Virus record (IMG/VR): IMGVR_UViG_3300010334_000023 | Span: 152,499-216,498 of that record | DNA length: 64,000 bases | Strand: one strand, 5' to 3' | Shown: positions 7,523 to 64,000 of the stretch, in pieces | How positions within the stretch are numbered: position 1 is the first letter of the stretch | Layout: every line of letters starts with the position of its first letter | Made by a program: the position numbers and the translations under genes | Notes under the pieces: generated by a model | The model's database searches: none | The model's input: only the letters and a program-made list of their open reading frames with translations | Told to the model about the DNA's origin: nothing

Positions 7523-7764
7523 TCACAGACCTAACTCTGCTATCAACAAGACAGCTGCAGACCGAAGCAGCTCGTGCCCTGTCAGCTGGTGATGGTTTTG
7601 GGAATCATGACTTGGTGAGATTCAACAAGGCAGCACATCATGACAGCCATGCTTGGTATCGCGCGGTGATAGAATGGTACGTGAGCGTTCACGGTGATCT
7701 GCCCAGCAGGGTTGGTCCAGGCATGACAGTGAAGCTGCTGGTGGAGGATGAACATGATCTATGA
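7519..7764 (+). CDS. Hypothetical protein
   Basis: 81 aa, ATGA-coupled to the upstream gene. Confidence 0.7.
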   Translation: MITDLTLLSTRQLQTEAARALSAGDGFGNHDLVRFNKAAHHDSHAWYRAVIEWYVSVHGDLPSRVGPGMTVKLLVEDEHDL

Positions 7765-17154: not shown

Positions 17155-17173
17155 TGTGTACCTCCAATGAACC

Positions 17174-17201
17174 ATGATAGCACATATTACCAGGGCGTCA
17201 A
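17174..17201 (-). promoter_or_regulatory. Sigma70-like promoter TTGACG-N16-TATCAT with extended TG
   Basis: Upstream of ATG 17154. Confidence 0.6.
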
Positions 17202-17228
17202 CCACTAAGCTGACGCCCTGTGAGTTAT

Positions 17229-41822: not shown

Positions 41823-42152
41823 TCATCTGATCTTTGGTTTGCGACCGCGCTTGCGACCAGTGCTGCGAGTAGTGCCGTCTGGATTGATGTTGAATATCTC
41901 GGCATACCTCTGCACGCTCATGCCATCTATGGCAGTAATGTCATCGCTGCTCACTGTCAACTGTCCCTGCCCGTTTGCTTCCTTGAGAGTGAGAGCGAAA
42001 GATCCGCTGTTTTCGACCACGCTGATCAGATGGTAATCATCAGAAGCCTGCTGTGGCCAACCAAATGCGTTCCTGCGACTGATCCTGGCAGTGACCATGC
42101 TGTCCTCACCTAGCTTGCCCTGTGCGATAAGCTCGCTCACGAGGTTGATCAT
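41823..42152 (-). CDS. Hypothetical protein with basic C-terminal tail
   Basis: ATGA-coupled to clpA; ends TGRKRGRKPKIR. Confidence 0.75.
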   Translation of the reverse strand: MINLVSELIAQGKLGEDSMVTARISRRNAFGWPQQASDDYHLISVVENSGSFALTLKEANGQGQLTVSSDDITAIDGMSVQRYAEIFNINPDGTTRSTGRKRGRKPKIR

Positions 42153-44437
42153 TGCGAGACCTCCTGAACCAACTGCAGGTCCTGCGGCTGTGCCGTGTCT
42201 GGCGCAGGTTCTGGATTGCTGAGATATTCAAACTCTAGCTTGTCTTCCTTGACAGTGATCATCACAGCTCCGCCGTGTCGCAGCTTGCCAAACAGCATCT
42301 CTCTGCTCAGTGGCTTCTTGATGTGATCGGCGATCACTCTGGCCAAGGGACGCGCACCCATGTTGGTGTCAAATCCCTTGTCGATCAGCCACTGCTTGGC
42401 AGAAGCATCGCAGACTATCTTGACGTTCTTGCGAGCACTCAGACCATTGAGCTCGCCGAGGAACTTGTCAACGATGCTGTCCATGTTGTCCTTGTTCAGC
42501 TTGTTGAACTTGATGATGGCATCCAGCCTGTTGCGGAACTCTGGTGTGAAGAAACGGTTGATGGCCTGCGTGTCCTCGTCTCGCACAGTGCTCTTGGTGA
42601 AGCCGATCAGTTCCTTTTCCATGTCAGCTGCACCCAGATTGCTGGTGAAGATCACGATGGCATTGCGTGCGCTGGCTGATTTTCCTTGGCTGCTGGTCAC
42701 TGTGCCATGATCCATCAGCGCAAGGAAGATGTTGTAGACGTCGGGATGTGCTTTTTCGATCTCGTCGAACAGCAGCACGCAGTGAGGATGCGTGTCAAGC
42801 TCATTGATCAGCACGCCGCCGCCGGCACCACCGTCACCGTAACCAACGTAACCCGGAGGTGATCCGATGAACTTGCTGACTGTGTGACGCTCTTGGTACT
42901 CGCTCATGTCAAATCTGGCAAAATGCACGCCTAGGCTCTTGGCCAACTGCTTGGCAACTTCGGTCTTGCCCACACCACTGGGCCCTGAGAACAGGAAGCT
43001 GCCCACGGTCTTGTCGCTCTCGCGCAGTCCGCTCCTGCTCATGTAGATGGCGTTGACCACTCCGTCGATGGCATCGATCTGTCCAAATATCTTGGCTTTG
43101 AGATCAGTCTCTAGCTGTTCTAGCTTGTCAGCTTCCTTGCTCTTTACCGTGGTCACAGGTACCTTGGCTACTCTGCTGACTTCGGCTTCGATCATTTCCT
43201 TGGTCAATAGCTTGGCACGTTCTGATGCTGGTTTGATCCTCTGCCATGCTGCTGCGCTGTCCACGATGTCGATGGCCTTGTCAGGCAAGCATCTGTCGTG
43301 TATGTGCTTGGTAGTGAGTTCCACTGCAGCATCCAAGGCTTCTGGTTCAAACTCGATACCATGGTACTCTTCGTAGTGCTTGGCGATACCTCTGAGTATG
43401 CGCTTGCTGTCCTCAACGCTGGGTTCGAACACGTCCAGCTTTTGGAATCGCCGCACCAGCGCACGGTCCTTTTCAAAGTGCTTGCGATATTCCTCGTTGG
43501 TGGTGCTGCCGATGCAGCAGATCTCGCCGCGGCTCAGCGCAGGCTTTAGCATGTTAGCTGCGTCGATGCTGCCACCGCCTCCGCCATTGCCTGCACCCAT
43601 GATCATGTGTATCTCGTCGATGAACATGATGGTCTTTGGCAGCGCTGAGAACGCTGCGATGATCTGCTTGAGACGCTCTTCAAAATCACCTCTGAACTTG
43701 GTACCTGCTACCAACGTGGCCACATCAAGGTTCCAGATGGTGTGATCGGCTAAGCTGTCTGGTACATCCCCTTCGATGATGCGCCGAGCCAAGCCTTCTA
43801 CTATGATGGTCTTGCCCACACCGGGATCGCCGGTCATGATCACGTTATGCTTGTTGCGGCGTGCCATGATCTGGCAGATCTGTTCAACTTCCTTCTCACG
43901 GCCGATCAGAGGATCTATGCGGCCTGCCTGTGCCTTGGCATTGAGATTGATGCAGTATTCCTCGAGTATCTCAAGAGCTGCTTTGCTGTCCATGGCCGAA
44001 TCTGGGCTGTTATCGGTGCGATTGGCTAGCTCGACTAGCTTTTCCTTGGTTGGACCATGCTTCTCCAAAAACCAACTAGCTGGGCTGTCTGGTATGTGAT
44101 ACAGTGCTAGCAACACGTCCACCGCACCTATGTCACCGCGACCGCTGAACAGGCTCTGTGTCTTGGCCTTCTTGATCACGTTGCTGAGCAGCGCTGTATG
44201 CCGAGGCTGGAAGCTGCCTGCCTTGACCACGACATGGTTGCGCTCGTTGTTCAACCACTCGCTGGTCAGAGTGATCAGCTTTTCCAGATCGCCCCCACCT
44301 TGTACCATGAGATCCTGTATGGGTTCCATCTCCAGCAGTCCTGCCAGCAGATGCTCAAGCGTTACCAGCTCGTGGTTAAGGCTAGCAGCCAGTTGATAAG
44401 CACGCTGCAGTGGTTGTTCAAAAGCCTGCATGCTCAT
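42149..44437 (-). CDS. clpA: ATP-dependent Clp protease ATP-binding subunit ClpA
   Basis: Clp-N (TLEHLL); AAA1 GDPGVGKT, FIDEIH, LVRRFQ, LPDKAID; AAA2 GPSGVGKTE, RFDMSEY, LFDEIEKAHPD, FTPEFRNRLD, MGARPL; no ClpB M-domain; 762 aa. Confidence 0.9.
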   Translation of the reverse strand: MSMQAFEQPLQRAYQLAASLNHELVTLEHLLAGLLEMEPIQDLMVQGGGDLEKLITLTSEWLNNERNHVVVKAGSFQPRHTALLSNVIKKAKTQSLFSGRGDIGAVDVLLALYHIPDSPASWFLEKHGPTKEKLVELANRTDNSPDSAMDSKAALEILEEYCINLNAKAQAGRIDPLIGREKEVEQICQIMARRNKHNVIMTGDPGVGKTIIVEGLARRIIEGDVPDSLADHTIWNLDVATLVAGTKFRGDFEERLKQIIAAFSALPKTIMFIDEIHMIMGAGNGGGGGSIDAANMLKPALSRGEICCIGSTTNEEYRKHFEKDRALVRRFQKLDVFEPSVEDSKRILRGIAKHYEEYHGIEFEPEALDAAVELTTKHIHDRCLPDKAIDIVDSAAAWQRIKPASERAKLLTKEMIEAEVSRVAKVPVTTVKSKEADKLEQLETDLKAKIFGQIDAIDGVVNAIYMSRSGLRESDKTVGSFLFSGPSGVGKTEVAKQLAKSLGVHFARFDMSEYQERHTVSKFIGSPPGYVGYGDGGAGGGVLINELDTHPHCVLLFDEIEKAHPDVYNIFLALMDHGTVTSSQGKSASARNAIVIFTSNLGAADMEKELIGFTKSTVRDEDTQAINRFFTPEFRNRLDAIIKFNKLNKDNMDSIVDKFLGELNGLSARKNVKIVCDASAKQWLIDKGFDTNMGARPLARVIADHIKKPLSREMLFGKLRHGGAVMITVKEDKLEFEYLSNPEPAPDTAQPQDLQLVQEVSQ

Positions 44438-44940
44438 GCTGTGACTCCCTGGCGCTTGACCTTCTTGGCCAGCTTGCGCCGTGCTAGATCCAAGCGCAGC
44501 TTGCTTACCCTGTCGTCGATCATGATGCCCTGTAGATGATCAAACTCATGCAGGAATATCCTGCTCCATCCAAAGCCCATGTCAGTGATCTGCTGGTTGC
44601 CAGTGATATCTCTGAACATGACCTTGATCTGCTTGCTGCGCTTGACCTTGAGAACCAAACCTGGCAGGCTAAGGCAGCCTTCATCATGTTCATCAGTCTC
44701 GTCGCTGGCACTGAGCACCACGGGATTGATGAACACTGCGTCCTGGCCTTCCACGCTGACCACGAACAGGTTGATGCTGTGCCCTACCTGTGGCGCAGCC
44801 AACCCAACTCCTCCGTGCGCCCGCAGCGTGTCAAACATGTCTTGGATCAGTGGACCCAGAGATGGAATCTCACTGGGTTCTATCAAGCGTGCTTGCTGCC
44901 GCAGCAGTGCTGCTGGACTGGTCACTAAGGGTAGTATCAT
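44434..44940 (-). CDS. def: Peptide deformylase
   Basis: GVGLAAPQVG, EGCLS and HEFDH all present. Confidence 0.95.
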   Translation of the reverse strand: MILPLVTSPAALLRQQARLIEPSEIPSLGPLIQDMFDTLRAHGGVGLAAPQVGHSINLFVVSVEGQDAVFINPVVLSASDETDEHDEGCLSLPGLVLKVKRSKQIKVMFRDITGNQQITDMGFGWSRIFLHEFDHLQGIMIDDRVSKLRLDLARRKLAKKVKRQGVTA

Positions 44941-44944
44941 TGTT

Positions 44945-45829
44945 TTACTGGCTCCTCTGGCTCTGCACTTGCTTGAGCAGATCCCTTTGTTGAGTGGTTA
45001 GATTCCTGCATATCTCTACGTTGAGCCTGAGGAACAGGTCTCCTCTGTGGCGTGCGTTGTTGTGAGCAGGCATGCCTTGGCCTTGAACACGCAGCATGGT
45101 ACCGTGCTGCGTGCCAGCTGGTACGTTTACGCTGAGCTTTTGGCCATCTATGCCCGTGACTTCTTGGTCGGTGCCCAGCATGGCTGCTATGGCATCCACG
45201 TTCAGCACAGCATGCAGATGCGGACCATCTCTGTTGAACAACGCATGCTCGCTGATTGACACGGTGACATAGAGATCACCTGGGGGCAGATTGCCCATGC
45301 TGCGGTCGCCGTGACCTTGGAACTTGAGCCTGGTGCCATTCTGCACGCCAGCAGGTATTGAGACATTGATGCTGGTCTGCTGCCCGTTGGCATCAAACTG
45401 CACGGGCACGGTCTTGCCAACAAAGGCATCTTCCAGGGTGATGTTGAGAGTGAACTGCCAATCTCTGTTACGAGGCGGCTGCGGTCTGCCAAAGCCCTGC
45501 CCGAACACCTGGCTCATGATGTCATCGAATGGATTGCCACCTCCGCCAAAGCTGAAACTGAAATCCGCACCAGGAAATCCGTGGTTGAAGTTTTGATGGA
45601 AGGGATTGCCTCCCTGTCCAAACCTGCGCTGTTGATCGTACTGCGCACGTTTCTGGGCATCGCCCAGCGTGTCATTGGCCTCGTTGATCTTCTTGAACAG
45701 GGCCTCTGAATCCTTGTTGCCCTGGTTGAGATCAGGGTGATGCTGCTTGGCTAATCGCCTATAAGCAGCTCTGATTTCGTCTGGACTGGCGTTTTCGCCT
45801 ATTTCGAGTATCTTGTAATAATCTTCCAT
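44945..45829 (-). CDS. dnaJ: DnaJ-class (type II / CbpA-like) co-chaperone
   Basis: DYYKILE...HHPD J-domain; G/F-rich linker; C-terminal PGDLYV...GDL; no Zn finger. Start reassigned to 45829. Confidence 0.9.
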   Translation of the reverse strand: MEDYYKILEIGENASPDEIRAAYRRLAKQHHPDLNQGNKDSEALFKKINEANDTLGDAQKRAQYDQQRRFGQGGNPFHQNFNHGFPGADFSFSFGGGGNPFDDIMSQVFGQGFGRPQPPRNRDWQFTLNITLEDAFVGKTVPVQFDANGQQTSINVSIPAGVQNGTRLKFQGHGDRSMGNLPPGDLYVTVSISEHALFNRDGPHLHAVLNVDAIAAMLGTDQEVTGIDGQKLSVNVPAGTQHGTMLRVQGQGMPAHNNARHRGDLFLRLNVEICRNLTTQQRDLLKQVQSQRSQ

Positions 45830-45834
45830 GACAG

Positions 45835-45864
45835 AGTGTAACCTATTGAGCACCATGGTGTCAA
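45835..45864 (-). promoter_or_regulatory. Sigma70-like promoter TTGACA-N18-TACACT (dnaJ-def-clpA, probably leaderless)
   Basis: ATG 5 nt after the -10 box; no SD. Confidence 0.45.
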
Positions 45865-45879
45865 TGCCAGCGGCATACC

Positions 45880-45886
45880 ATAAATA
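45880..45886 (+). promoter_or_regulatory. Late promoter motif ATAAATA
   Basis: Upstream of the holin-like gene, divergent from dnaJ. Confidence 0.55.
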
Positions 45887-45921
45887 ATCAAATATCACCA
45901 ACTAGCAAGGGGTGCAGTGTC

Positions 45922-46611
45922 TTGGATGAAGAAAAACAGGCTACGTTGGCGCAGATAGCTGTTAACTATCTAACCAACACTCGTCCGATCATGCTAGCAG
46001 TGCATTTCATTTATATTGCCATGATAACGCTGGTATTTTCAGCGTCTTACGTGATTGCTTTCCATTTTACCAGCTTGGTCACGGTTTACGAAGAAGCCCA
46101 CAGCATCAGCAGCTTCAGCTTGAATCTCAAGACATCTTTGGAGAACGATAACGCTATCTATGCCAATCTTAACAGGCTGCTCGGCGACAACGGTGGTATG
46201 AGAGCCTATGTGTACAGATACCACAACGGATTGGCAGCAATCAGTGGTGTGCCATTCTTCTTCCAGACCATGACACATGAAGTGATCAGCCCTGGTACTT
46301 CTCGCATCATGAACTTTGAGCAGCGCATACCAGCCAGCATACACATGGCCATCAACAACCACTTTGTCAATGACAAGTGTGCAGTGATCAAGAACGCTGA
46401 CAAGGACAGGGAAAACCAAGATTACTATTTCTGGATGAGCAGAAACGCCAAACATCTCATACGCTGTCCGATCTACATGAGCAACGGCGATCTGTTTGGA
46501 TTCGTTGGTGTGGATTTCGCCACAGACATCAGCGAACTGGATACCAGCATCAAGCGCATCAGGGACGCAACGTCTGACATCGCCAAGATATTCCAAAGCA
46601 TCAAGCGCTGA
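45922..46611 (+). CDS. Single-TM membrane protein with GAF-like C-terminal domain; T4 holin T-like candidate
   Basis: One TM at about residues 25-52; RAYVYRYHNG and LIRCPIYMSNGDLFGFVGVDF resemble T4 T (AVYSF, MYSCPYFNLDNIYAGTITM) as recalled; 229 aa; late promoter. Confidence 0.5.
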   Translation: MDEEKQATLAQIAVNYLTNTRPIMLAVHFIYIAMITLVFSASYVIAFHFTSLVTVYEEAHSISSFSLNLKTSLENDNAIYANLNRLLGDNGGMRAYVYRYHNGLAAISGVPFFFQTMTHEVISPGTSRIMNFEQRIPASIHMAINNHFVNDKCAVIKNADKDRENQDYYFWMSRNAKHLIRCPIYMSNGDLFGFVGVDFATDISELDTSIKRIRDATSDIAKIFQSIKR

Positions 46612-46670: not shown

Positions 46671-47381
46671 ATGCACATACTCATACCCATGAGCGGGCGA
46701 GGTTCTAGGTTCGCCCAGCAGGGTTACGCAAAACCCAAACCTCTGATAGAATTCTTCGGCAAGCCAATGGTCCAGCATGTGCTGGAGAACCTTGGACTGC
46801 ACAATACATTTACACTATGCGTGCTGCGCGAGCACTATGATGCAGATCCTGTGCTGTTTGAACAGCTAGGTCGCATGACTGATCTCAATTTAGTGTTTGT
46901 GGACCAGGTCACACAGGGTGCTGCTGAGACCTGCTTGCTGGCCAAGCAACATATAAAACCCAATGATACTCTGTTCATTGCCAACTGCGATCAGATCATG
47001 GCCTGGGACCAAGATCACTTTGAAGAATGGTTAGCAGCTGAGCGACTGGATGGTGCCATGCTGACCTTCTTCAAGGACAGTCCAGCCTACAGCTATGTGG
47101 AAGTCGACCAAGGCGGCATAGCCATACGCACGGCTGAAAAGCAGGTCATAAGCCCGCATGCTACCACTGGCATCTACGTGTGGACCCAAGGCAAGGATTT
47201 CGTGTGGGCAGCAGAACAGATGATAGCAGACAACGTGCGTGTCAATAATGAATTCTATGTTTGCCCTGTGTATAATTGGAACATCGCACGCGGCGACCGC
47301 ATAGGCATATATCCACCCCAGGCTCACTGGCCCATAGGCACACCAGAAGACTTGGACATCTACATAGAGGCGCACCAATGA
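46671..47381 (+). CDS. Sugar-phosphate nucleotidyltransferase (NTP_transferase family)
   Basis: LIPMSGRGSRF...PKPL; TQGAAET; IANCDQ; AEK; NEFYV; GTPEDL. Confidence 0.85.
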   Translation: MHILIPMSGRGSRFAQQGYAKPKPLIEFFGKPMVQHVLENLGLHNTFTLCVLREHYDADPVLFEQLGRMTDLNLVFVDQVTQGAAETCLLAKQHIKPNDTLFIANCDQIMAWDQDHFEEWLAAERLDGAMLTFFKDSPAYSYVEVDQGGIAIRTAEKQVISPHATTGIYVWTQGKDFVWAAEQMIADNVRVNNEFYVCPVYNWNIARGDRIGIYPPQAHWPIGTPEDLDIYIEAHQ

Positions 47382-47710
47382 AAGTATTTGATCCCACGCT
47401 GTTCACAGGTGGTTGGTTCGTTGGAGACTTCCAACCCAGCATCTGGAACACCAAGGACTTTGAAGTAGGTTACAAGTATCATCAGGCCGGCGAACCATGG
47501 CCAGCTCACTATCATGAGCACATGGACGAGATCACCGTTTTGGTAGATGGCGTGATGAGGATACAGGACCAGATCCTGGTTGGCCCGACCATATTCCTGC
47601 TGAAAAAGGGCGAGATAGCAGATCCAGAATTCCTAGCAGATTGCCAAGTGGTGGTGATCAAGACTCCCAGCGTGCCTGGCGACAAGATAGAGGTGAAAAA
47701 AGAATCATGA
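47378..47710 (+). CDS. Cupin-fold protein (putative sugar isomerase/epimerase)
   Basis: GWFVGDF; PAHYHEHMDEIT (H-x-H-x4-E cupin motif 1); ATGA-coupled on both sides. Confidence 0.75.
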   Translation: MKVFDPTLFTGGWFVGDFQPSIWNTKDFEVGYKYHQAGEPWPAHYHEHMDEITVLVDGVMRIQDQILVGPTIFLLKKGEIADPEFLADCQVVVIKTPSVPGDKIEVKKES

Positions 47711-48849
47711 GCATAGACATCGTCAGAGACCAAAAGGAACTGGGTACCTATTTCTACGTTACCTACGACGTAGAAAGCACCAGCACGCTGTTTGACGCAG
47801 CATGGGCCATAGCAGTGGGCCAGAGCATTGGCAATCCCAACACACGGTCAGTCTGGGAGACACCAGAGATGATCGAAGCACACTGTGCCAAGATCCTGCG
47901 CAGCAACAACTTTGACAAGAAGAAGGGTTTGGTCACCATTGGTTACCCAGCTGCCAACATCAACTGGGACAACGATGGCATCGCTCAGCTGCTGTGCATC
48001 ATCCAGGGCGGCCAGACTGACATTGACATCATCAAGAAGTGTCGCGTGGTTGATCTTGAGATACATCCCCAGACCATAGACAGCCACTTCAACAAGCCAC
48101 GCTATGGCATCAGTGGCATGAGGGCCTACACTGGCTGCTTTGGCAAACCGTTCTTTGGAGGCATCATCAAGCCCAAGACCGGCGTAACACCTCATCAGCT
48201 GCTAGACATGGTCAAGGAACTGGTTGATGGCGGCGTTAACTTCATCAAGGAAGACGAGATCCTCAGCAATCCAGACATCTGCAGGCTGGAAGATCGCGTG
48301 AGCTTGATCAGTGATTACATCAGCGACAAGAGCGTGGTATATACCTTCTGCATCAACAGCGATCCTCTGCATGTGCTGGATCGCGCACGTTTCGTGGCCA
48401 GCAATGGCGGCACAGGGGTGCACGTGAACGTGTGGAGCGGTCTTGGCGTGTACAAGAGCATACGCGATCTGGATCTGGATCTGTTCATACACTATCAGAA
48501 GAGCGGTGACAAGGTCATCACGCATAAGAAGAATCCTTTTGGCATAGAGTGGACTGTGCTGTGCCAGCTGGCAGCTATCAGCGGTGTTGACACCATACAC
48601 GCAGGCATGTGGGGTGGCTACCTATCGGATCCCGAAGACGAGATCACTGCGTACATGAAAGTTCTCAGAAGCGGCAACGTGGTTCCTGCGCTAAGCTGCG
48701 GTATGACAGCAGAGCTGATCCCACCAATCGTGGAAAAGTTTGGTGTGGACTGGATGGCCAACGTGGGCGGCGCCATACACGGTCATCCAGATGGCACGCT
48801 GGCAGGTGCACAGAAGATACGCCGAGCCATAGACAGCTTGAAGGTGTGA
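47707..48849 (+). CDS. RuBisCO-like protein (form IV RLP)
   Basis: GGIIKPKTG (K175/K177); NFIKEDE (K201, D203, E204); IHYQKSG (H294); IHAGMWGGYL; ALSCG; VGGAIHGHP. Lacks E60, R295 and K334 equivalents. Confidence 0.9.
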   Translation: MSIDIVRDQKELGTYFYVTYDVESTSTLFDAAWAIAVGQSIGNPNTRSVWETPEMIEAHCAKILRSNNFDKKKGLVTIGYPAANINWDNDGIAQLLCIIQGGQTDIDIIKKCRVVDLEIHPQTIDSHFNKPRYGISGMRAYTGCFGKPFFGGIIKPKTGVTPHQLLDMVKELVDGGVNFIKEDEILSNPDICRLEDRVSLISDYISDKSVVYTFCINSDPLHVLDRARFVASNGGTGVHVNVWSGLGVYKSIRDLDLDLFIHYQKSGDKVITHKKNPFGIEWTVLCQLAAISGVDTIHAGMWGGYLSDPEDEITAYMKVLRSGNVVPALSCGMTAELIPPIVEKFGVDWMANVGGAIHGHPDGTLAGAQKIRRAIDSLKV

Positions 48850-48850
48850 C

Positions 48851-49324
48851 ATGAAGTTCATAGCACACCGAGGATTGATGGACGGTCCTGATGAGCGCAT
48901 GCAGAACCGCCCTGATCAGATCGTCAAGGCACTGGACCATGGATTCGAAGCAGAGATAGACCTGTGGCATATAGATGGCAAGTGGGTGCTGGGACATGAT
49001 GGTCCTGAGCATGACATCGAATTTGATTACCTCAGGCAGAAGGGCCTGTGGATTCACTGCAAGAACCTCGATGCGCTGTTTGCTCTCAGAGCACAGAAAC
49101 ATCACTACAACTTCTTTTGGCACGAAAGTGATCTAGTGACGCTGACCAGCACCAACATGGTCTGGACTTACTTTGGCAAGCCAGAGACCGTGAGCCCCAT
49201 GAGCATCTGCGTGATGCCGGAAGCTACCTATGAATGGACAGACATAGAGCAGATGGTGCGCAGCTGGAACTGGTATGGCTTCTGCAGCGACTATGTGAAC
49301 CGGCTGCGGGCATGGCAACACTAG
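48851..49324 (+). CDS. Minimal glycerophosphodiester-phosphodiesterase (PLC-like) protein
   Basis: FIAHRG; EAEID; LGHD; WIHCKN; GFCSDY. Confidence 0.7.
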   Translation: MKFIAHRGLMDGPDERMQNRPDQIVKALDHGFEAEIDLWHIDGKWVLGHDGPEHDIEFDYLRQKGLWIHCKNLDALFALRAQKHHYNFFWHESDLVTLTSTNMVWTYFGKPETVSPMSICVMPEATYEWTDIEQMVRSWNWYGFCSDYVNRLRAWQH

Positions 49325-49971
49325 CACTATGCTTTGCGGGATTACCTCGCATAACTGACGTCAGCACTGCTAGCTGGCGTCGCCTCATTGATCAACACGA
49401 CACTGATGTATTCGTGCATGCGTGGAGCAACGATGCTGAACTGTCTCGCAACTGGATCAGCAGTGCGTATGCTCCCACAGAGATGATAATAGAATCTCAG
49501 CGAGAGTTTGATACCAGCATCTACAAGGATCGCATCTGGGCCTATAGGTCGCAGCCACGAAACGTGCTCAGCATGTGGTACAGCATAGCTCAGAGCCTTC
49601 AGCTGGCAGACCGGCACGCACGGAAACAGCGCAAGACCTATGACTTTGTTGCCCGTGCACGATTTGATTGGCACTGTGATCAGTTTGTGCTGGAACAGTA
49701 CGATGGCCTCACAGTGCCAGATGATCCCGGTCTGAGCGGTCACAATTTCCAGCATCGCGGAACATGGCACGTGGCACACAACGATCAGTTTGGATATGGC
49801 AGCATGACTGTGATGCGAGACTACGGAGAGACATTTGCTCGCATACCTTGGCTGTATTCTGTAGATGGTGTCGACTTCTGCAGCGAATTATTCCTCACCA
49901 CTAACATGATGACCAAGCAAATTCCGGTTAAATTACAGAAGGGCATGCGCTATCGCATGGTAAGGGACTAA
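49312..49971 (+). CDS. Putative glycosyltransferase
   Basis: ALCFAGLPR; TDVFVHAW; SMWYS; YDFVARARFD; NDQFGYG; start reassigned to 49312. Confidence 0.6.
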   Translation: MATLALCFAGLPRITDVSTASWRRLIDQHDTDVFVHAWSNDAELSRNWISSAYAPTEMIIESQREFDTSIYKDRIWAYRSQPRNVLSMWYSIAQSLQLADRHARKQRKTYDFVARARFDWHCDQFVLEQYDGLTVPDDPGLSGHNFQHRGTWHVAHNDQFGYGSMTVMRDYGETFARIPWLYSVDGVDFCSELFLTTNMMTKQIPVKLQKGMRYRMVRD

Positions 49972-49972
49972 C

Positions 49973-51043
49973 ATGAAGATAGGTGTATATACGATCGCGT
50001 TAAACGAGCTACAGCACTGCGAACGCTGGGCTCAGAGCGTGGCAGATGCTGACTATCGTGTTGTGCTAGACACGGGTAGCACAGATGGCACGGTTGAGAA
50101 GCTGCGCGAGCTGGGTGTCACTGTGTTTGAACAACGTTTTGATCCATGGCGCTTTGATCATGCTCGCAACGCTGCGCTGGCCTGCTTGCCCACAGACACT
50201 GACATCTGCATCAGCCAGGACATGGACGAGTTCCTTGCTGAAGGTTGGCGACCCAAGATGGAAGCAGCTTGGCGCATGAACGAGACCACACGCTTGGCCT
50301 ATACCTATGTGTTTGATTATCGTGTTGGTGGACCAAATGATGGTTACCGCATGGACAAGATACACGCTAGGATAGGCTATCAATGGAAGCGCCCAGTGCA
50401 TGAGACAGTGTTCAGCACAGTGGGTCTTGAGAATGTTGCCGAAGATCTCAGCATAGTGCTGAACCAGATACAGGATCGCAGCAAGGACACTCGAGGGCGT
50501 TACTTGCCACTGCTGAAGATGGCAGCCGAGGAAGACAGCGACGACAGCCAGATCAGCTTTTGGTATGGCCGCGAGCTGATGTATGCGAACCAACATACCG
50601 AGTCAGTGACAGAGCTTGAGAGATATCTCAGCCTTGAGACCAGTAGGTGGCCCATAGAGCGTTCAGAAGCCATGATATACATCAGCAGGATGAGCGACAG
50701 CCGCAAGCTGGAATATCTGCAGCGAGCACTGATATGTTCGCCTGAACGCAGGCAGGTGTGGTTAGAGATGGCTCGCTACTATTACAACAACCAGGACTGG
50801 CACGGTCTGCTGTGGGCAGCTGGCAGCGGCATGGAAAAGAGCCGCAGGGATCACAGCTATCTGGACAGTGCAGATGCCTGGGGCAATCAGCTGCTGGACT
50901 TTGGCAGCATAGCTGCTGCTAACCTTGGATGGTACAGCAAGGCAGCTGATTGGTGCCGACAGGCACTGGACATGAGCCCCAGTGACGATAGATTGAAAAC
51001 CAACCTGCAGTGGATGCAGGATAAGATCAAGGGACAAGCATGA
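49973..51043 (+). CDS. GT2 glycosyltransferase with C-terminal TPR repeats
   Basis: VLDTGSTDGT; SQDMDE; WKRPVHE; TPR helices (FWYGRELMY, ALDMSPSD). Confidence 0.85.
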   Translation: MKIGVYTIALNELQHCERWAQSVADADYRVVLDTGSTDGTVEKLRELGVTVFEQRFDPWRFDHARNAALACLPTDTDICISQDMDEFLAEGWRPKMEAAWRMNETTRLAYTYVFDYRVGGPNDGYRMDKIHARIGYQWKRPVHETVFSTVGLENVAEDLSIVLNQIQDRSKDTRGRYLPLLKMAAEEDSDDSQISFWYGRELMYANQHTESVTELERYLSLETSRWPIERSEAMIYISRMSDSRKLEYLQRALICSPERRQVWLEMARYYYNNQDWHGLLWAAGSGMEKSRRDHSYLDSADAWGNQLLDFGSIAAANLGWYSKAADWCRQALDMSPSDDRLKTNLQWMQDKIKGQA

Positions 51044-52104
51044 TGCGCATAGCGATTTACGGACCAACCAAGAACCAAGCTCACCATGTGCAGGCATGGT
51101 ATGATAGCTGCAAGGATGCTGATGTTATCTGCATCGCAGACACTGGCAGCACAGACGGAACCAAGGAAGCCATGTTGGCACTGGGAGTGCAGGTCACGGA
51201 TGTCCGCATCATACCTTGGCGCTTTGACGATGCGTTCAACACTGCGATGTATCTAGTACCAGATGACATAGATGTGTGCATACGCCTGGACACCGATGAG
51301 AGACTGACACCAGGTTGGCGCGACAAGCTGGAAGCAGCTTGGAAGCCAGAAACCACGAGGCTGCGCTATCCCTACATCTGGAACTGGAACGCTGACGGCA
51401 CGCCAGGTCGCCAGTGGTACGGCGATCGCATACACAGCCGCAAAGGCTACCGCTGGATGGGAGCCACGCACGAAGGACTGGTCAGCAGATTACCAGAAAT
51501 ACATACTTTCACAGATGATTTCCAGATACATCACTTCCCAGATCCCAAGAGCAAGAGCGGTGATCTCAGCCTGCTGGAAGAAAGCGTGAGAGAGTGGCCG
51601 CATGATAGCCGCATCAAGGCCTACCTGGGCCGCGAGTATGCTTATCAAAAGATCTGGGACAAGTGCGCAGCTACCTACAAGGAATTCCTCGGTATGAGCT
51701 TTGACACGGTTGAGCGCTGCCAGGCTCTGACCACTCTGGCACAGGCTGAACCCGAGAACAAGCTGTTTTGGCTCAAGCAGGCTGCCTATGAAGTACCCAC
51801 TCATCGCGAACCTTTAGTAGCATTGGCACAGCACTACTATGAAGCAGCAGACTGGAAGAACTGCTACGACTATTCTCATCGCGCTCTCAAGATCACCAAG
51901 CATCCCATGGACTACACCTGCACACCTGAGGCATGGGGATGGCAACCGCATGATCTGCTGAGCATCGCAGCATGGAACCTAAGGCTCTATGACGAATGCT
52001 TGGAACAGGCCAAGACAGCTCTGGAAAAATCTCCAGATGACACGCGACTGAAAAACAATCTCAAGCTGATAGAGGATTTCATAGCCAAGAATCTACGTGG
52101 TTGA
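51040..52104 (+). CDS. GT2 glycosyltransferase with C-terminal TPR repeats (paralogue)
   Basis: IADTGSTDGT; RLDTDE; WMGATHE; YLGREY; ALEKSPDD. Confidence 0.85.
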   Translation: MMRIAIYGPTKNQAHHVQAWYDSCKDADVICIADTGSTDGTKEAMLALGVQVTDVRIIPWRFDDAFNTAMYLVPDDIDVCIRLDTDERLTPGWRDKLEAAWKPETTRLRYPYIWNWNADGTPGRQWYGDRIHSRKGYRWMGATHEGLVSRLPEIHTFTDDFQIHHFPDPKSKSGDLSLLEESVREWPHDSRIKAYLGREYAYQKIWDKCAATYKEFLGMSFDTVERCQALTTLAQAEPENKLFWLKQAAYEVPTHREPLVALAQHYYEAADWKNCYDYSHRALKITKHPMDYTCTPEAWGWQPHDLLSIAAWNLRLYDECLEQAKTALEKSPDDTRLKNNLKLIEDFIAKNLRG

Positions 52105-52110
52105 TACCAC

Positions 52111-52116
52111 TAAATA
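52111..52116 (+). promoter_or_regulatory. Late promoter motif TAAATA
   Basis: 5 nt before ATG 52122. Confidence 0.55.
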
Positions 52117-52121
52117 CCCCC

Positions 52122-52352
52122 ATGAGGCTACAGTACCTAGACCATAAACCAATCATAACTCTGCGAGAAGACACTTCGGTGTTTGCCTTCTTCACAGAAG
52201 CAGGGGTGGGTAAGATAGTCAAGGGCGTGAACACCACGCCTGACGTTGGTGTGGATGAGATACCTCGTCAGGCTGCTAAGTTCAAGATCAAGGTTGATCG
52301 CAACGGCTATCCGCCTGTGGCACGCAGCGACGGCAAGATTCCCAAGCTATAG
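52122..52352 (+). CDS. Small hypothetical protein
   Basis: 76 aa from an in-frame ATG; probably leaderless. Confidence 0.65.
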   Translation: MRLQYLDHKPIITLREDTSVFAFFTEAGVGKIVKGVNTTPDVGVDEIPRQAAKFKIKVDRNGYPPVARSDGKIPKL

Positions 52353-55493: not shown

Positions 55494-58400
55494 ATGGCAA
55501 TAGACCCTAATACCATCGATACCCAGTTTCCTGTCGCTAATCAAGACAATGATAGCCAGGGATTTAGGAACAATTTCTCGGCTATCCAAGAGAACTTCAT
55601 ACAGGCCAACGCAGCAATAAGCAGCCTGCAGGCCACCACGATAGGTTTAGCCGGACCGGTATACACGCCAATAGCCAGCAATCTAACATCTGGATCAGTC
55701 ACGCTGATCACGGAATTCCAGACCAGCTCAGGCAATTCTACCCTGACCTTCCCTGGTACCAGTGCTGTGGTGTTGCCTGTGGGCAACAGCAGCCAACGTC
55801 CAAACCCAGTGATAGGTCAGATACGCTATAACACTGACACCAATCAGATCGAATATTACAACAGCACCAACTGGTATCCAGTGGGTCCAACAGGTCCCAC
55901 AGGTGCTGACAGTGTCGTAACTGGTCCAACTGGTCCGGCCAATGGTCCTACCGGACCTACTGGTCCGCTGGGCCTGCAGGGTGTGCCTGGACAGCAAGGG
56001 TTCCCAGGCATACCAGGACCAACTGGTCCAACTTCCGTGATCACTGGACCAACTGGTTACACAGGTCCCACATCTAACATATCTGGACCAACTGGCCCAA
56101 CTGGCATCACCGGACCAACAGGTCCCACTGGTGCAACAGGCCCTACTGGCTACACTGGTCCCACAGGTCCCACAGGTGAGACTGGTCCAACTGGACCAAC
56201 TGGTATCACTGGACCCACGGGCATAGGCATACCAGCTCCGCCCGTGCGCAGCGTGCAGTTCAATGCTGGTAGCAATGTGTTTGGTGGCAGCAGCCTCTTT
56301 ACCTGGGGCACCGACAATGTGCTCAACGTCAACAGCATACTGAGCCAGAACACCCAGATCGTTAATGATGTGATACGCAATAGGTTGGCCTCGGCTAATC
56401 TCGTGCTACAGACACCTGTTGACGGCGGCGTCTACGTGAGCAACGATTTCTATGTGCAGGGCATATCACACAGGACAGCACCACACGTCACTGGCGTGAT
56501 GTACGTGACCGTGGACGGTGACGATGCCAACACTGGCTTGGCAGAAGATCGCGCCAAGCGTACCATAGCCAGCGCTTGCTCAGCAGCAGCACAGCTCATA
56601 GCCAATCCCAGCACGCCTTGGATATACTGCACTATATATGTGCGGGCGGGTGTGTATACCGAGCCAAATCCCATATTGGTTCACAGCGGCATCACGGTGT
56701 TTGGCGATAACCTACGTTCTGTTACCGTGACTCCGCTCAATCCAACATTGGACATATTCTGGCTCAACCCCAAGACATATCTCTATGGCATGACATTCCG
56801 TGGCCATCAGTATCCTGCTGCAGCTGTGCAGTTTCCAGAGAATGGAACCACTGTTATACATGAACTGCATGACTGGGCGTCTCCATACGTGCAGAACTGC
56901 TCAAGCATCACCCTGGGCAAGTATCAAGGCAACGTGCAGATAAGCGAAGCTGGCACTGGTATGATCGTGGACGGTGTTCGTGGTCGCAAGCTCAGTGCGC
57001 CAGATTTTGGCAACGTGATAGTACCGACCATGACCACATGGACCAGCGGCAACACCGCAGTGTTCTATCAAGCCTACGCACCAACCTGGAGTGGTAACGT
57101 GGCAGTGGGTTGGCTAGCTCAGAGCGGCATCGAAGGCAGCCCTGCGGTGGTGACCAGCGTTGGTACAACTACCATTGACGGCAACCCAGCCTACACTTAC
57201 TCGCTAGACGAGTTTGACTACAATACCGTAGACATATATACCTTTGACAACGTGCTGACCAGCACTAGTGCTATCATACTCAACAACACCAGCCCGGGAT
57301 TTGGTGACACGGTGGTTGGGGGATGGTATATGCAGAGTCCTGCCTATCCAGGCTTTGTCAACGCATACACGCTGTTGCGAGCCAACATACCATTCATACA
57401 GGCACAGGTAGTAGCCTACATGCAGGCTGAATTTGGCTATCCTGCCACCAGCACTAGTGCCAGAGATATCGGATACATAACCGATGCAGTTTGCCGCGAT
57501 CTCCTTGCCAGCAACTATGACCTAGCGCTGCAGGCAGGAGAATATTTCTGGACTGAGACAGCAAATGGTCCGGTCAGCGTGCTACCTCCCAGCAGCATAG
57601 CTATCTGCCTAGCTGGCATACAGTTTGCTAGCCAAATAGCACAGACCGCGATTACCAATACCAGCTTCGCTCCTGTATATGATCCCGGAACTCCGCAGGT
57701 TTTCTACGTCTATCTAGGCGACAGCGGTAGAATAGCTGTGACCACCGTGGCTACCAACTACAACATAGTGCTTGAAATCATTCAGAACGGCCCATATAAC
57801 AATCCGCTTGCCAACGGCCAGAGGCTCATGGAGAGCAACAGGCTATTCGCACAGAACGAAGTGGTAGCATACGTAAACACCCTGTATCCGGACACGTTAT
57901 ATAACGCTACTCTGCAGGCTCAGTGCTATCGTGATGTTGGTTATCTCTGGGATGCTATTACCTATGATACCTATCATCTAGGCAATGCTCAGAGCGTGAC
58001 AGATGCGCTGTTCTACTGGGATGGCGCCACATCGCGCATACCAGGCGAGATACCACAGACTGTGAATGCTTTTATCTATGCCAATCAATTGGCCATTAAC
58101 GTGCTCAACAACACACAGACTGCTCCGTTATATCAGAGCAACATAGCTCAGGTCATAGACAACACGCTGGTTGGTGGCAACGTGGTGGTACAGTATGTGA
58201 ATCAACTGTTTGCCTACGTTGAAGACATCGTGGCCAATGGGGCAGGAGCTGCACCCGTGATGTATAACACCACGGGACCTGGCACGCCAATAAGCAGCGT
58301 GACCTATCAGCCAGGTTACGATAGCATGAACGGTAACAATGCTTGGCTCATAGAGTTCGCTGGCCCCATACCCGGCACAAGCTGGCCATATCCGCTGAGC

Positions 58401-60168: not shown

Positions 60169-64000
<3,832 letters not shown>

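What the first reader, a model, noticed from the sequence alone, without database searches (positions are those of the whole stretch)
47707..48849. RLP active site keeps the Mg/carbamate core but has lost the carboxylation residues
Seen: K175/K177 (IIKPKTG), K201-D203-E204 (as KEDE rather than KDDE), H294, H327, S379 and the GG-x3-GHP phosphate loop are kept. The E60 position reads Q (GQSIG), R295 reads Y (HYQKS), and loop-6 K334 reads Y (GGYL). Established: K334 and R295 are needed for RuBP carboxylation and P2 binding. Inference: not a CO2-fixing auxiliary gene, but an enolase/isomerase-type enzyme on a mono-phosphorylated substrate. At 380 aa it is very compact. Residue equivalences were aligned by eye.
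Basis: partly seen in the sequence, partly recalled or inferred. Interest (0 to 1): 0.7.

Follow-up and report, generated by a model that had tools for sequence, protein, structure and literature searches.

The report
Phage RuBisCO-like enzyme in glycan cluster
This jumbo-phage gene encodes a RuBisCO look-alike that cannot fix CO2; it always sits beside a nucleotidyltransferase in sugar-decoration gene clusters, so it probably helps build an unusual activated sugar, not capture carbon.

Summary
The ORF at 47707-48849 (+) is a real, intact 380-aa homologue of the RuBisCO large chain. Pfam scores it at 127 bits, the AF2 model has pLDDT 96.5, and it matches form III RuBisCO at TM 0.88.

- E60 is G (Q is position 61).
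- 'IHYQKS' is H292-Y-Q294-K295, so H294 is lost (invariant Q) and R295 is kept as K/R.
- Also lost: N123 to G and K334 to Y.
- Kept: K175, K177, K201, D203, E204, H327, S379, G381 and G403/404.

It is therefore not a carboxylase. The 'mono-phosphate' argument loses its basis.

The gene lies on a freshwater Atu_ph07-like jumbo myovirus. It belongs to the divergent 'form IV-like' phage clade already reported by Jaffe et al. 2019, with function unknown.

What this work adds:
- The clade is also chromosomal in Pelagibacter, Verrucomicrobiae, Legionella, Nonomuraea, DPANN and CPR.
- In 130 of 138 loci it lies by an NTP-transferase. One relative is an RLP-NTP-transferase fusion.
- A small cupin (95/138) and a compact GDPD-like phosphodiesterase (87/138) usually accompany it.
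- The surroundings are glycosyltransferase, epimerase and methyltransferase clusters.

Best reading: a Mg/carbamate enolising enzyme that makes a sugar-phosphate precursor for a nucleotide-activated glycan building block. The substrate is unknown.

The parts
45922..46611 (+). 229-aa ORF, first gene of the co-directional cluster. It is conserved at this position in the related jumbo-phage contigs. Function unknown.
   Evidence: ORF list. Neighbour cluster 11 is present in 11 viral loci. Only a weak GAF hit, in the L013 homologue. No significant Pfam hit here.
46671..47381 (+). Nucleotidyltransferase, 236 aa, NDP-sugar pyrophosphorylase type. It is the near-universal partner of this RLP clade.
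   Evidence: PF00483 E 1.4e-10 and PF12804 E 7e-9. PDB 4evw E 3e-15, RmlA about 1e-7. 44% identical to cyanophage S-CAM9/S-PRM1 pyrophosphorylases. A homologue lies within 6 kb of the RLP in 130/138 loci. Fused to the RLP in P0124. The stop overlaps the next start as ATGA.
47378..47710 (+). Small cupin, 110 aa, with a metal-binding H-x-H-x4-E motif. It is translationally coupled to the RLP.
   Evidence: phrog_24762 E 3e-25. Atlas neighbours are Cupin_2 clusters. The family profile hits small cupins (7zvm M6P isomerase, KdgF, quercetinase motif). Invariant H44 and E51, near-invariant H46. Found in 95/138 loci, 91 of them within 300 bp of the RLP. ATGA overlap with the RLP start.
47707..48849 (+). 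RuBisCO-like protein (P0001, 380 aa): the finding itself.
47818..47847 (+). N-domain loop G38-Q-S-I-G-N-P-N-T-R47, which replaces the E60...T65-W66 motif. G38, Q39 and S40 are invariant; N43, P44 and R47 are near-invariant in the family.
48169..48258 (+). Retained catalytic core: K155 and K157 (K175/K177), then K181-E-D183-E184 (K201 carbamate site and the Mg ligands D203/E204).
   Evidence: Invariant in 48/48 family sequences. Aligned to the KPK and KDDE motifs of form III structures.
48490..48510 (+). End of beta5, H262-Y-Q264-K265-S-G-D268. This equals H292, I293, H294 to Q, R295 to K, and H298 to D.
48598..48621 (+). H298 (H327, kept) and loop 6 G-M-W-G-G-Y305 (K334 to Y, invariant).
48694..48792 (+). 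S330-C-G332 (S379, G380 to C, G381) and G354-G355...G-H-P (G403/G404), the retained P1-phosphate cradle.
48851..49324 (+). Compact GDPD-like phosphodiesterase, 157 aa.
   Evidence: Invariant H6, R7, N19, E35, D37 and H49 match the GDPD catalytic motifs. The profile hits GDPD 7e0v at E 5.5e-5 across HRG...EN...ExD...HD. AF2 pLDDT 95.7. All top Foldseek hits are GDPDs, TM 0.5-0.6. Found in 87/138 loci. Fused to an NTP-transferase in L036.
49234..49971 (+). 245-aa ORF, weak DUF7796 match. The start is uncertain, because the listed ATG overlaps the previous gene by 91 nt.
   Evidence: PF25072 E 4.7e-4, below cut-off. phrog_13607 E 4e-15. Found in 59/138 loci.
49973..51043 (+). Glycosyltransferase family 2 domain plus C-terminal TPR, 356 aa.
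   Evidence: PF00535 and TPR hits. phrog_13126 'beta-1,4-glycosyltransferase' E 4e-83.
51040..52104 (+). Paralogous GT2-TPR glycosyltransferase, 354 aa.
   Evidence: phrog_13126 E 1.6e-88. PF00535, weak.
52101..52352 (+). 83-aa ORF that closes the co-directional cluster. Function unknown.
   Evidence: ORF list. No PHROG or Pfam hit.

Best explanation
The gene encodes a non-carboxylating member of the RuBisCO superfamily (an RLP, 'form IV-like'). It belongs to a distinct, monophyletic clade found in phages and in cellular surface-glycan loci.

Shown:
- It keeps the Mg2+/carbamylated-lysine enolisation core and the P1-phosphate cradle.
- It has family-invariant replacements at the residues that position and add CO2.
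- It is almost always encoded next to, and once fused with, a nucleotidyltransferase. A small cupin and a GDPD-like phosphodiesterase usually accompany it, inside clusters of glycosyltransferases and sugar-modifying enzymes.

Inferred:
- The RLP enolises a keto-sugar phosphate and converts it by isomerisation, epimerisation or a related proton- or carbonyl-shift reaction into an unusual sugar or polyol phosphate.
- The cupin performs an adjoining isomerisation.
- The nucleotidyltransferase activates the product as an NDP- or CDP-linked donor.
- Glycosyl- or phospho-transferases place that donor on a glycan. Here these are two GT2-TPR proteins; in Legionellaceae it is a LicD-family enzyme.
- In this phage the target is probably the collagen-like or fibre proteins encoded on both sides of the cluster, or the host envelope.

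The substrate and the exact reaction are not known.
For: Fold and homology.

Residue pattern and its invariance across 48 diverse family members.

The family is monophyletic (100/100) against other RuBisCO/RLP sequences. There is also a clear E-value gap (1e-68 down to about 1e-36).

Neighbourhood:
- An NTP-transferase is present in 130/138 loci. Seven of the eight exceptions are truncated contigs.
- Cupin 95/138 and GDPD-like 87/138.
- The same pairing is seen in phage contigs, complete Pelagibacter and Verrucomicrobiae chromosomes, Legionella spp., Nonomuraea, Francisellaceae, Turneriella, DPANN and CPR.

Fusions centred on the NTP-transferase:
- RLP+NTP.
- HAD+NTP in 12 RLP loci listed; the HAD domain was shown by Pfam in three of them, L099, L089 and L130.
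- NTP+GDPD in L036.

Recurrent neighbours are SDR epimerase/dehydratases, GT2/GT4/GT11, DegT aminotransferase, methyltransferases, WavE, Wzz and LicD.

Overlapping ATGA start/stop codons link NTP, cupin and RLP.

The cluster is flanked by tail-fibre-like and collagen-repeat proteins.

Lake metatranscriptomes hold identical fragments of these genes. This is weak evidence.
Against: - No biochemical datum exists for any member of the clade.
- Gene neighbourhood shows association, not reaction order. The RLP could act on the NDP-linked sugar instead of before activation.
- The RLP-NTP fusion is a single 2.5-kb metagenomic contig.
- Some 'cellular' MAG/SAG contigs may be phage DNA, and some IMG/VR contigs may be cellular.
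- One well-flanked locus (L027) has no NTP-transferase within 6 kb.
- My ORF calling for the neighbourhood census was crude.
- Transcription is not proven, because DNA carry-over in the RNA libraries is possible.
Confidence: 0.6

Rival explanations
1. A methionine/MTA-salvage RLP. It would be either an MtnW-type DK-MTP-1-P enolase, or a DeepYkr-type 5-methylthioribulose-1-P 1,3-isomerase working with a cupin methylsulfurylase, carried by the phage to recycle sulfur or SAM by-products.
For: - An adjacent RLP+cupin gene pair is exactly the arrangement of the R. rubrum / R. palustris MTA-isoprenoid shunt (PMC5893883).
- MtnW models give partial hits (NF007095 120 bits).
- Radical-SAM genes, which produce 5'-deoxyadenosine, occur elsewhere in the window and in some related clusters.
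Against: - MtnW equivalog scores are far below cut-off (120 against 409 bits; 95 against 514).
- No MtnA/IF-2B gene occurs among 1911 neighbour ORFs or in the phage record.
- The complete Pelagibacter and Verrucomicrobiae genomes that carry the module have no MtnA at all.
- The constant partner is a nucleotidyltransferase in glycan clusters, which has no role in methionine salvage.
- A third of loci lack the cupin.
Confidence: 0.1
2. The RLP acts after activation, on an NDP-linked keto-sugar made by the NTP-transferase plus a dehydratase. It would serve as an unusual keto-isomerase or epimerase, with its open, tail-less active site accommodating the nucleotide.
For: - SDR epimerase/dehydratase genes are the commonest further neighbour, in 42 loci.
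- Small cupins typically act on NDP-4-keto-sugars.
- The protein lacks the C-terminal tail that closes the RuBisCO active site. Its alignment to 2cwx ends at residue 377 of 380.
Against: - Most loci have no dehydratase nearby. The minimal Legionella module is RLP + NTP-transferase + LicD.
- The conserved G381/G403/G404 cradle binds a terminal phosphate monoester in all solved family members.
- No precedent exists in the superfamily.
Confidence: 0.15
3. A bona fide or residual RuBP carboxylase/oxygenase, or a form III-like enzyme of a nucleotide (AMP/R15P) salvage pathway that boosts host carbon or nucleotide metabolism.
For: The closest sequence and structure matches are archaeal form III RuBisCOs: 2cwx E 1e-36, TM 0.88, and TIGR03326 as the best NCBIfam hit. 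Position 295 stays basic and H327 is kept.
Against: - E60, N123, H294 and K334 are all replaced, invariantly.
- TIGR03326 scores 172.6 against a 497.45 cut-off.
- The record has no PRK, RbcS or R15P isomerase, and none lies near any family member.
Confidence: 0.02
4. A catalytically dead scaffold or regulatory pseudo-enzyme retained in glycan clusters.
For: Several canonical catalytic residues are lost, and no activity is known.
Against: 26 positions are invariant across members only 32-55% identical. These include the whole Mg/carbamate triad, K175, K177 and S379, together with new family-specific invariant residues on barrel strands (H239, N241, Q264, Y305). This pattern is typical of an active site under selection.
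Confidence: 0.03

Closest known systems
Phage 'form IV-like' RuBisCO-like proteins of Jaffe, Castelle, Dupont & Banfield 2019 (Mol Biol Evol 36:435; PMC6389311)
   Same: These are divergent RLPs on large Myoviridae-type phage contigs from IMG/VR and groundwater. They group with Beckwithbacteria sequences, branch outside the classical RLP clades and have divergent key residues. My tree likewise places a Beckwithbacteria sequence (L030) inside the clade. This gene is almost certainly a member.
   Different: That paper left the function open and discussed the genes as possible vehicles of RuBisCO transfer. It did not report the nucleotidyltransferase/cupin/GDPD partnership, the glycan-cluster context, or the chromosomal copies in Pelagibacter, Legionella, Verrucomicrobiae, Nonomuraea and many DPANN lineages. 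Their sequences are not held here, so identity of the clades is inferred.
Archaeal form III RuBisCO (P. horikoshii 2cwx/2d69, T. kodakarensis 3a12/3a13)
   Same: This is the best sequence and structure match (27% identity, TM 0.88). It shares the two-domain fold and the residues K175, K177, K201, D203, E204, H327, S379, G381 and G403/404.
   Different: The phage protein lacks E60, T65/W66, N123, H294, H298 and K334. It is about 45-60 aa shorter, with no C-terminal tail. It has no AMP phosphorylase or R15P isomerase partners. It scores 172.6 against the 497.45-bit cut-off of TIGR03326.
DeepYkr RLP (5-methylthioribulose-1-P 1,3-isomerase) with its adjacent cupin methylsulfurylase, R. rubrum / R. 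palustris MTA-isoprenoid shunt (PMC5893883)
   Same: An RLP gene lies next to a small cupin gene whose product acts on the RLP's product. The chemistry needs only the enolisation core.
   Different: The family's neighbourhoods hold no MtnP/MtnA context. The constant partner is a nucleotidyltransferase. Some carrier genomes lack MtnA altogether. Homology between the two cupins was not tested.
MtnW/YkrW 2,3-diketo-5-methylthiopentyl-1-phosphate enolase (G. kaustophilus 2oek, B. subtilis 2zvi)
   Same: It is a non-carboxylating RLP that uses the Mg/carbamate core to enolise a mono-phosphorylated keto substrate.
   Different: It is only a distant match (E 1e-24, against 1e-36 for form III). It scores far below the equivalog cut-offs and has a different gene context.
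Bifunctional type II phosphomannose isomerase / GDP-mannose pyrophosphorylase (AlgA/ManC architecture; from my own knowledge)
   Same: An NTP-transferase is followed by a small metal-binding cupin. This is the same order as the NTP-transferase and cupin genes here, and small M6P-isomerase cupins are among the cupin profile's PDB hits (7zvm).
   Different: Here the two are separate proteins and are joined by an RLP, which the GDP-mannose pathway does not use. The resemblance is a lead and was not tested.

Membership tests
Bona fide RuBisCO (forms I-III) | Two-domain large-chain fold (N-terminal alpha/beta domain plus C-terminal TIM barrel) | tested here: met
   PF02788 and PF00016 hits. AF2 pLDDT 96.5. 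Foldseek TM 0.88 to 2d69/2cwx.
Bona fide RuBisCO (forms I-III) | Activation and enolisation core K175, K177, K201, D203, E204 | tested here: met
   K155, K157, K181, D183 and E184 are invariant in 48/48 family members.
Bona fide RuBisCO (forms I-III) | Carboxylation residues E60, N123, H294, K334 | tested here: not met
   These read G38, G102, Q264 and Y305. G38, Q264 and Y305 are invariant and G102 is near-invariant in the family.
Bona fide RuBisCO (forms I-III) | P2-phosphate ligands R295, H298, H327 | tested here: inconclusive
   K265 (K or R in the family) and H298 are kept. The H298 position is D268 and varies.
Bona fide RuBisCO (forms I-III) | Curated model score (TIGR03326 type III; PRK04208) | tested here: not met
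   172.6 against 497.45 bits; 161.9 against 438 bits.
Bona fide RuBisCO (forms I-III) | Pathway partners (PRK, small subunit, or R15P isomerase/AMP phosphorylase) | tested here: not met
   None is present in the 216-kb record, which is estimated 42% complete. No IF-2B gene lies near any of the 138 family loci.
RuBisCO-like proteins (form IV in the broad sense) | Large-chain homologue lacking residues essential for carboxylation | tested here: met
MtnW/YkrW DK-MTP-1-P enolase | Equivalog model score | tested here: not met
   NF007095 scores 120.5 against 409 bits. TIGR03332 scores 95.3 against 513.6 bits.
MtnW/YkrW DK-MTP-1-P enolase | Methionine-salvage gene context (MtnA, MtnB, MtnX, MtnD) | tested here: not met
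   No MtnA-family ORF near any locus. The annotated recurrent neighbours are glycan genes. MtnB and MtnX were not searched for specifically.
DeepYkr RLP (MTRu-1-P 1,3-isomerase) | Adjacent cupin acting on the product | tested here: inconclusive
   A cupin adjoins the RLP in 91/138 loci. Its relation to the methylsulfurylase cupin was not tested because no reference sequence is held.
DeepYkr RLP (MTRu-1-P 1,3-isomerase) | Supply of MTRu-1-P by MtnP/MtnA in the same organism | tested here: not met
   The complete Pelagibacter and Verrucomicrobiae carrier genomes have no IF-2B family gene.
OiaX/OiaT apiose-catabolic RLPs | Equivalog model score | tested here: not met
   NF042437 scores 130 against 700 bits.
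Phage 'form IV-like' clade (Jaffe et al. 2019) | Encoded on large myovirus-type phage contigs | tested here: met
   The record carries a T4-type tail sheath, baseplate wedge, topoisomerase II and RNR. The sheath is 41-47% identical to Atu_ph07 and Phosso.
Phage 'form IV-like' clade (Jaffe et al. 2019) | Clusters with Beckwithbacteria sequences, apart from the classical forms | tested here: met
   The Beckwithbacteria locus L030 falls inside the clade. The clade has 100/100 support against 16 outgroup RuBisCO/RLP sequences.
Phage 'form IV-like' clade (Jaffe et al. 2019) | Direct sequence identity with their set | not testable with these tools

The most novel reading that the evidence does not exclude
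This clade would be the first RuBisCO-superfamily enzyme with an anabolic role. It would make the committed, unusual sugar- or polyol-phosphate of a previously unrecognised nucleotide-activated glycan building block. The four-part module (RLP, nucleotidyltransferase, cupin, GDPD-like phosphodiesterase) is shared by jumbo phages, SAR11, Legionella, Verrucomicrobia, actinomycetes, CPR bacteria and DPANN archaea. Phages would use it to decorate their fibres or remodel the host surface.
Probability: 0.45. Interest if true: 0.8.

Novelty: new variant of a known kind. Interest (0 to 1): 0.62.

Why it matters
Every RLP function assigned so far is catabolic or salvage: methionine/MTA salvage, or apiose and acid-sugar catabolism. 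Phage RLPs, known since 2019, have been discussed mostly as possible carbon-metabolism auxiliary genes or as vehicles of RuBisCO transfer.

The census here points somewhere else. It shows a near-obligate partnership with a nucleotidyltransferase inside surface-glycan clusters, across viruses and all three kinds of cellular carriers.

If that holds, three things follow:
- The known chemistry of the RuBisCO scaffold widens.
- An abundant 'rbcL-like' viral gene would no longer be counted as carbon fixation in AMG surveys.
- A new sugar donor would be exposed in very abundant aquatic organisms (SAR11 and their phages, freshwater jumbo phages).

It also makes the question testable, because culturable carriers exist (Azospirillum oleiclasticum, Nonomuraea rosea, Legionella nautarum).

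Tried and rejected
- tblastn of the RLP against 50,697 deposited phage genomes found nothing, and PHROGs has no family for it. No cultured phage in that collection therefore carries it. The neighbours do have PHROG families.
- Complex prediction with RLP x2 plus the NTP-transferase returned 'no answer' (score 0.00). This is not evidence either way.
- Tabita et al. 2007 (PMC2168653) is not held, so I could not check whether this clade equals their 'IV-GOS' group. Searches for 'IV-GOS', for RLP with nucleotidyltransferase, and for RLP with glycosyltransferase/polysaccharide found nothing relevant.
- The LicD-family neighbour is confined to Legionellaceae loci. The CDP-alcohol/phosphotransferase reading therefore cannot be generalised.
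- HAD-NTP fusion and the GDPD-like gene are not mutually exclusive. They are not simple alternatives.
- The cupin and p157 gave no Pfam or NCBIfam hit as single sequences. Only family profiles, motifs and the fold identified them.
I could not measure distances from Q264, K265 or Y305 to the metal site. Their placement rests on alignments and on strand boundaries.
- The bona fide carboxylase reading was considered and rejected on residues, scores and context.
Full report
**The object**

The window holds an ORF at 47641-48849 (+). Its biologically supported start is the ATG at 47707. That start gives a 380-aa protein, P0001. Metagenomic homologues of 98-64% identity have the same length and the same N-terminus. 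The ATG overlaps the stop of the upstream gene as ATGA, and AGAGGTG lies 11 nt upstream.

Pfam finds both RuBisCO large-chain domains: PF00016 at E 8.6e-37 and PF02788 at E 9e-6. The best solved relatives are archaeal form III enzymes, 2cwx at E 1.3e-36. An AlphaFold2 model built on 112 homologues is very confident, with pLDDT 96.5 and pTM 0.93. It superposes on 2d69/2cwx at TM 0.88.

**Residue check**

I mapped the canonical spinach-numbered motifs in three ways. The first was three phmmer alignments to form III structures, whose motifs are unmistakable. The second was a 230-sequence MAFFT alignment of family and outgroup sequences. The third was the model's strand boundaries.

Kept:
- K175 and K177 (K155, K157).
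- K201, D203 and E204 (K181, D183, E184, with D202 changed to E).
- H327 (H298).
- S379 and G381 (S330, G332).
- G403 and G404 (G354, G355).

Lost:
- E60 to G38.
- T65 and W66 to N43 and P44.
- N123 to G102.
- H294 to Q264.
- H298 to D268.
- K334 to Y305.
- G380 to C331.

The H of IHYQKS is H292. Q264 is the last residue of beta5 and falls in the column where 75 of 88 outgroup sequences have H. K265 falls in the R295 column and is K or R throughout the family.

Across 48 family members that are only 32-90% identical to the query, 26 positions are invariant. They include the whole core, Q264, Y305 and S330, together with family-specific H239 and N241 on beta4. This looks like a live active site, but not a carboxylase's.

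NCBIfam scores agree. Every curated model is missed by a wide margin: type III 172.6 against 497 bits, OiaX 130 against 700, MtnW 120 against 409.

**Where it lives**

The window is the last 64 kb of a 216,498-bp IMG/VR virus record, which CheckV estimates to be 42% complete. The record encodes a T4-type tail sheath, a baseplate wedge and hub, topoisomerase II and RNR. The sheath is 41-47% identical to those of the 470-490-kb jumbo phages Phosso and Atu_ph07.

Contigs of 485-519 kb carry syntenic copies of the same region. The DNA recurs in freshwater and lake metagenomes from 2017 to 2023. Two lake metatranscriptomes contain 100%-identical fragments of the NTP-transferase, cupin, RLP and glycosyltransferase genes at low depth. 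That is weak evidence of expression, because DNA carry-over cannot be excluded.

**Prior knowledge**

Jaffe et al. 2019 (PMC6389311) already described about 80 divergent 'form IV-like' RLPs on Myoviridae-type phage contigs, together with Beckwithbacteria sequences. They noted divergent key residues and left the function open. The gene as such is therefore not new. I found no paper linking any RLP to nucleotidyltransferases or glycan clusters.

**The family**

An exhaustive HMMER search shows a sharp shell. About 25 clusters at the 50% level score E below 1e-68 (41-56% identity). A few lie near 1e-50. Then comes the generic RuBisCO/RLP background at about 30% identity.

IMG/VR holds at least 409 viral contigs with a member. 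The clade is also present in cellular genomes:
- A complete Pelagibacter chromosome and many SAR11 SAGs.
- A complete Verrucomicrobiae chromosome.
- Legionella nautarum, L. drozanskii and L. maceachernii.
- Francisellaceae, Turneriella, Nonomuraea rosea and Azospirillum oleiclasticum.
- Many DPANN and CPR MAGs.

A careful ML tree (LG+C20+F+G4) supports the following:
- The clade has 100/100 support against 16 outgroup sequences.
- The deepest branches are cellular (Azospirillum, Legionella/Francisellaceae, Nonomuraea, Elusimicrobia, Turneriella; 99/93).
- Next comes a clade of DPANN-archaeal records, which also holds one contig labelled Pelagibacteraceae (100/98).
- Last is a crown in which phage, SAR11, Bacteroidota and CPR sequences interleave (100/97).
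- The window sits in a jumbo-phage subclade (97/98).

With outgroup rooting, this suggests that phages acquired the gene from cellular glycan loci. It does not suggest that phages seeded cells with RuBisCO.

**Context, the main new result**

I called ORFs in 138 family loci (the window, assemblies, 50 GTDB records and 80 IMG/VR contigs). I clustered them and re-checked the result by tblastn.

- A homologue of the upstream nucleotidyltransferase lies within 6 kb in 130 of 138 loci. In 61 of these it lies within 300 bp of the RLP.
- Seven of the eight exceptions are contigs that end next to the RLP. Only L027 truly lacks it.
- The pairing holds in every lineage, including the basal cellular ones. 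There the order is RLP then NTP-transferase.
- A relative 50% identical to the query (P0124, 667 aa) is an RLP-NTP-transferase fusion.

Two further partners are frequent.

The first is a cupin of about 108 aa with an H-x-H-x4-E motif. It occurs in 95 of 138 loci, and in 91 of them it lies within 300 bp of the RLP.

The second is a protein of about 157 aa that I identify as a compact GDPD-type phosphodiesterase (87 of 138 loci). The evidence is as follows:
- It has invariant HR...EN...ExD...HD motifs.
- Its profile hits GDPD 7e0v at E 5.5e-5.
- Its AF2 model has pLDDT 95.7.
- All top Foldseek hits are GDPDs.

The NTP-transferase is a fusion hub. HAD_2-NTP fusions occur in 12 RLP loci and in cyanophage S-CAM9. 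An NTP-GDPD fusion occurs in a Micrarchaeota record.

Other recurrent neighbours:
- SDR epimerase/dehydratases, in 42 loci.
- GT2, GT4 and GT11 glycosyltransferases.
- DegT aminotransferase.
- FkbM and other methyltransferases.
- WavE and CTP_transf_like proteins.
- A Wzz-like protein in Francisellaceae.
- A LicD-family phosphotransferase in Legionellaceae.

In the window itself the NTP-transferase, cupin and RLP genes overlap by ATGA, and the GDPD-like gene starts one base after the RLP stop. A DUF7796-like ORF and two GT2-TPR glycosyltransferases follow. Tail-fibre-like and collagen-repeat proteins flank the cluster.

**What it is not**

- No PRK, small subunit or IF-2B-family (R15P/MTR-1-P) isomerase is present in the record.
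- No IF-2B gene occurs among the 1911 neighbour ORFs.
- The complete Pelagibacter and Verrucomicrobiae carrier genomes have no IF-2B gene at all.

RuBP made via R15P isomerase, and MTRu-1-P, are therefore unlikely general substrates. This weakens both the methionine-salvage and the AMP-pathway readings. It does so despite the suggestive precedent of adjacent RLP and cupin genes in the R. rubrum / R. palustris MTA-isoprenoid shunt (PMC5893883).

**Mechanism proposed**

Shown: the enolisation core and the P1-phosphate cradle are kept, the carboxylation residues are lost, and the gene is coupled to a nucleotidyltransferase in glycan clusters.

Inferred: the RLP binds a keto-sugar phosphate. It abstracts the alpha-proton with the Mg-bound carbamate and K175 system. 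It then reprotonates elsewhere, giving isomerisation, epimerisation or carbonyl migration as in the R. rubrum RLP, and so produces an uncommon sugar or polyol phosphate. The cupin catalyses a neighbouring isomerisation. The nucleotidyltransferase activates the product. GT2 or LicD-type transferases install it on a glycan. The GDPD-like enzyme handles a phosphodiester somewhere in this scheme.

K265 and H298 leave room for a second phosphate or another anion. The HAD-NTP fusions would fit a bisphosphate intermediate that is trimmed before activation, as in heptose activation. That last comparison is my inference from general knowledge.

The reaction order (before or after nucleotide activation), the substrate and the acceptor are all unknown.

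**Verdict**

The conclusion 'not a CO2-fixing gene' stands. The 'mono-phosphate' argument does not.

The gene belongs to an already reported phage RLP clade. Its near-obligate nucleotidyltransferase partnership, its wide cellular distribution and its glycan context appear to be unreported, and they point to a new, anabolic use of the RuBisCO fold.

Noticed in passing
P0221 (metagenomic protein, 583 aa): A TIR domain is fused to the N-terminus of a complete RuBisCO-like protein, outside the clade studied here. A TIR-RLP fusion suggests a defence or signalling role for an RLP.
   Followed up: no
P0161, P0164 (726 and 742 aa): Fusions of an IF-2B-family isomerase (R15P/MTR-1-P isomerase type) with a full RuBisCO large chain. 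Two steps of the AMP/nucleoside pathway sit in one polypeptide.
   Followed up: no
window 55494-59669 (+) and 60184-64000 (+, runs off the end); also 37996-40212 (-): Very large proteins with collagen triple-helix repeats. The 3'-open ORF scores 339 bits over 4 stretches. They explain the rise in GC to 60% after 60 kb. They are candidate fibre proteins and possible acceptors of the glycan cluster's product.
   Followed up: partly
window 42149-45901 (-): A ClpA/ClpB-like two-AAA chaperone (762 aa), a peptide deformylase (168 aa) and a DnaJ-like protein (318 aa) lie in a row, divergent from the glycan cluster. The arrangement is conserved in the 485-493-kb relatives.
   Followed up: partly
window 30899-37930 (-): A 2343-aa ORF with no Pfam hit. 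It lies next to tail-fibre-like genes.
   Followed up: no
window 7748-10245 (+): Two adjacent ORFs with radical-SAM family or SPASM matches (phrog_21308 and phrog_14086; PF13186). Radical-SAM genes also recur in related RLP clusters (cluster 13, 11 loci).
   Followed up: no
L013 / L014 (485-kb and 61-kb relatives): The related jumbo-phage contigs encode a ribosomal protein L33-like ORF (weak Pfam hit) and an IF1 (eIF-1a fold) homologue near the RLP cluster.
   Followed up: no
L136, L133, L147 (IMG/VR contigs): In 8 viral loci the RLP is followed directly by an APH/fructosamine-kinase-like kinase and a 3-dehydroquinate-synthase-like sugar-phosphate cyclase. This hints at cyclitol-type or heptose-derived chemistry in some versions of the module.
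   Followed up: no
L036:7980-9497 (-) (Micrarchaeota MAG): A single 505-aa protein combines the NTP-transferase and a GDPD domain. It ties the GDPD-like partner to the nucleotidyltransferase independently of the RLP.
   Followed up: partly
L015 (Synechococcus phage S-CAM9, gp067 and neighbours): Cyanophages carry a HAD_2-NTP-transferase fusion 44% identical to the window's transferase. It lies inside a glycosyltransferase/epimerase cluster but has no RLP. The transferase module therefore exists without the RLP in cultured phages.
   Followed up: partly
window 49234-49324: The listed start of the 245-aa DUF7796-like ORF overlaps the GDPD-like gene by 91 nt. The true start is probably further downstream.
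   Followed up: no
window 15880-17205 (-): A 441-aa ORF matching phrog_1314, annotated HNH endonuclease (E 4.5e-116). It is a possible mobile element in the phage genome.
   Followed up: no
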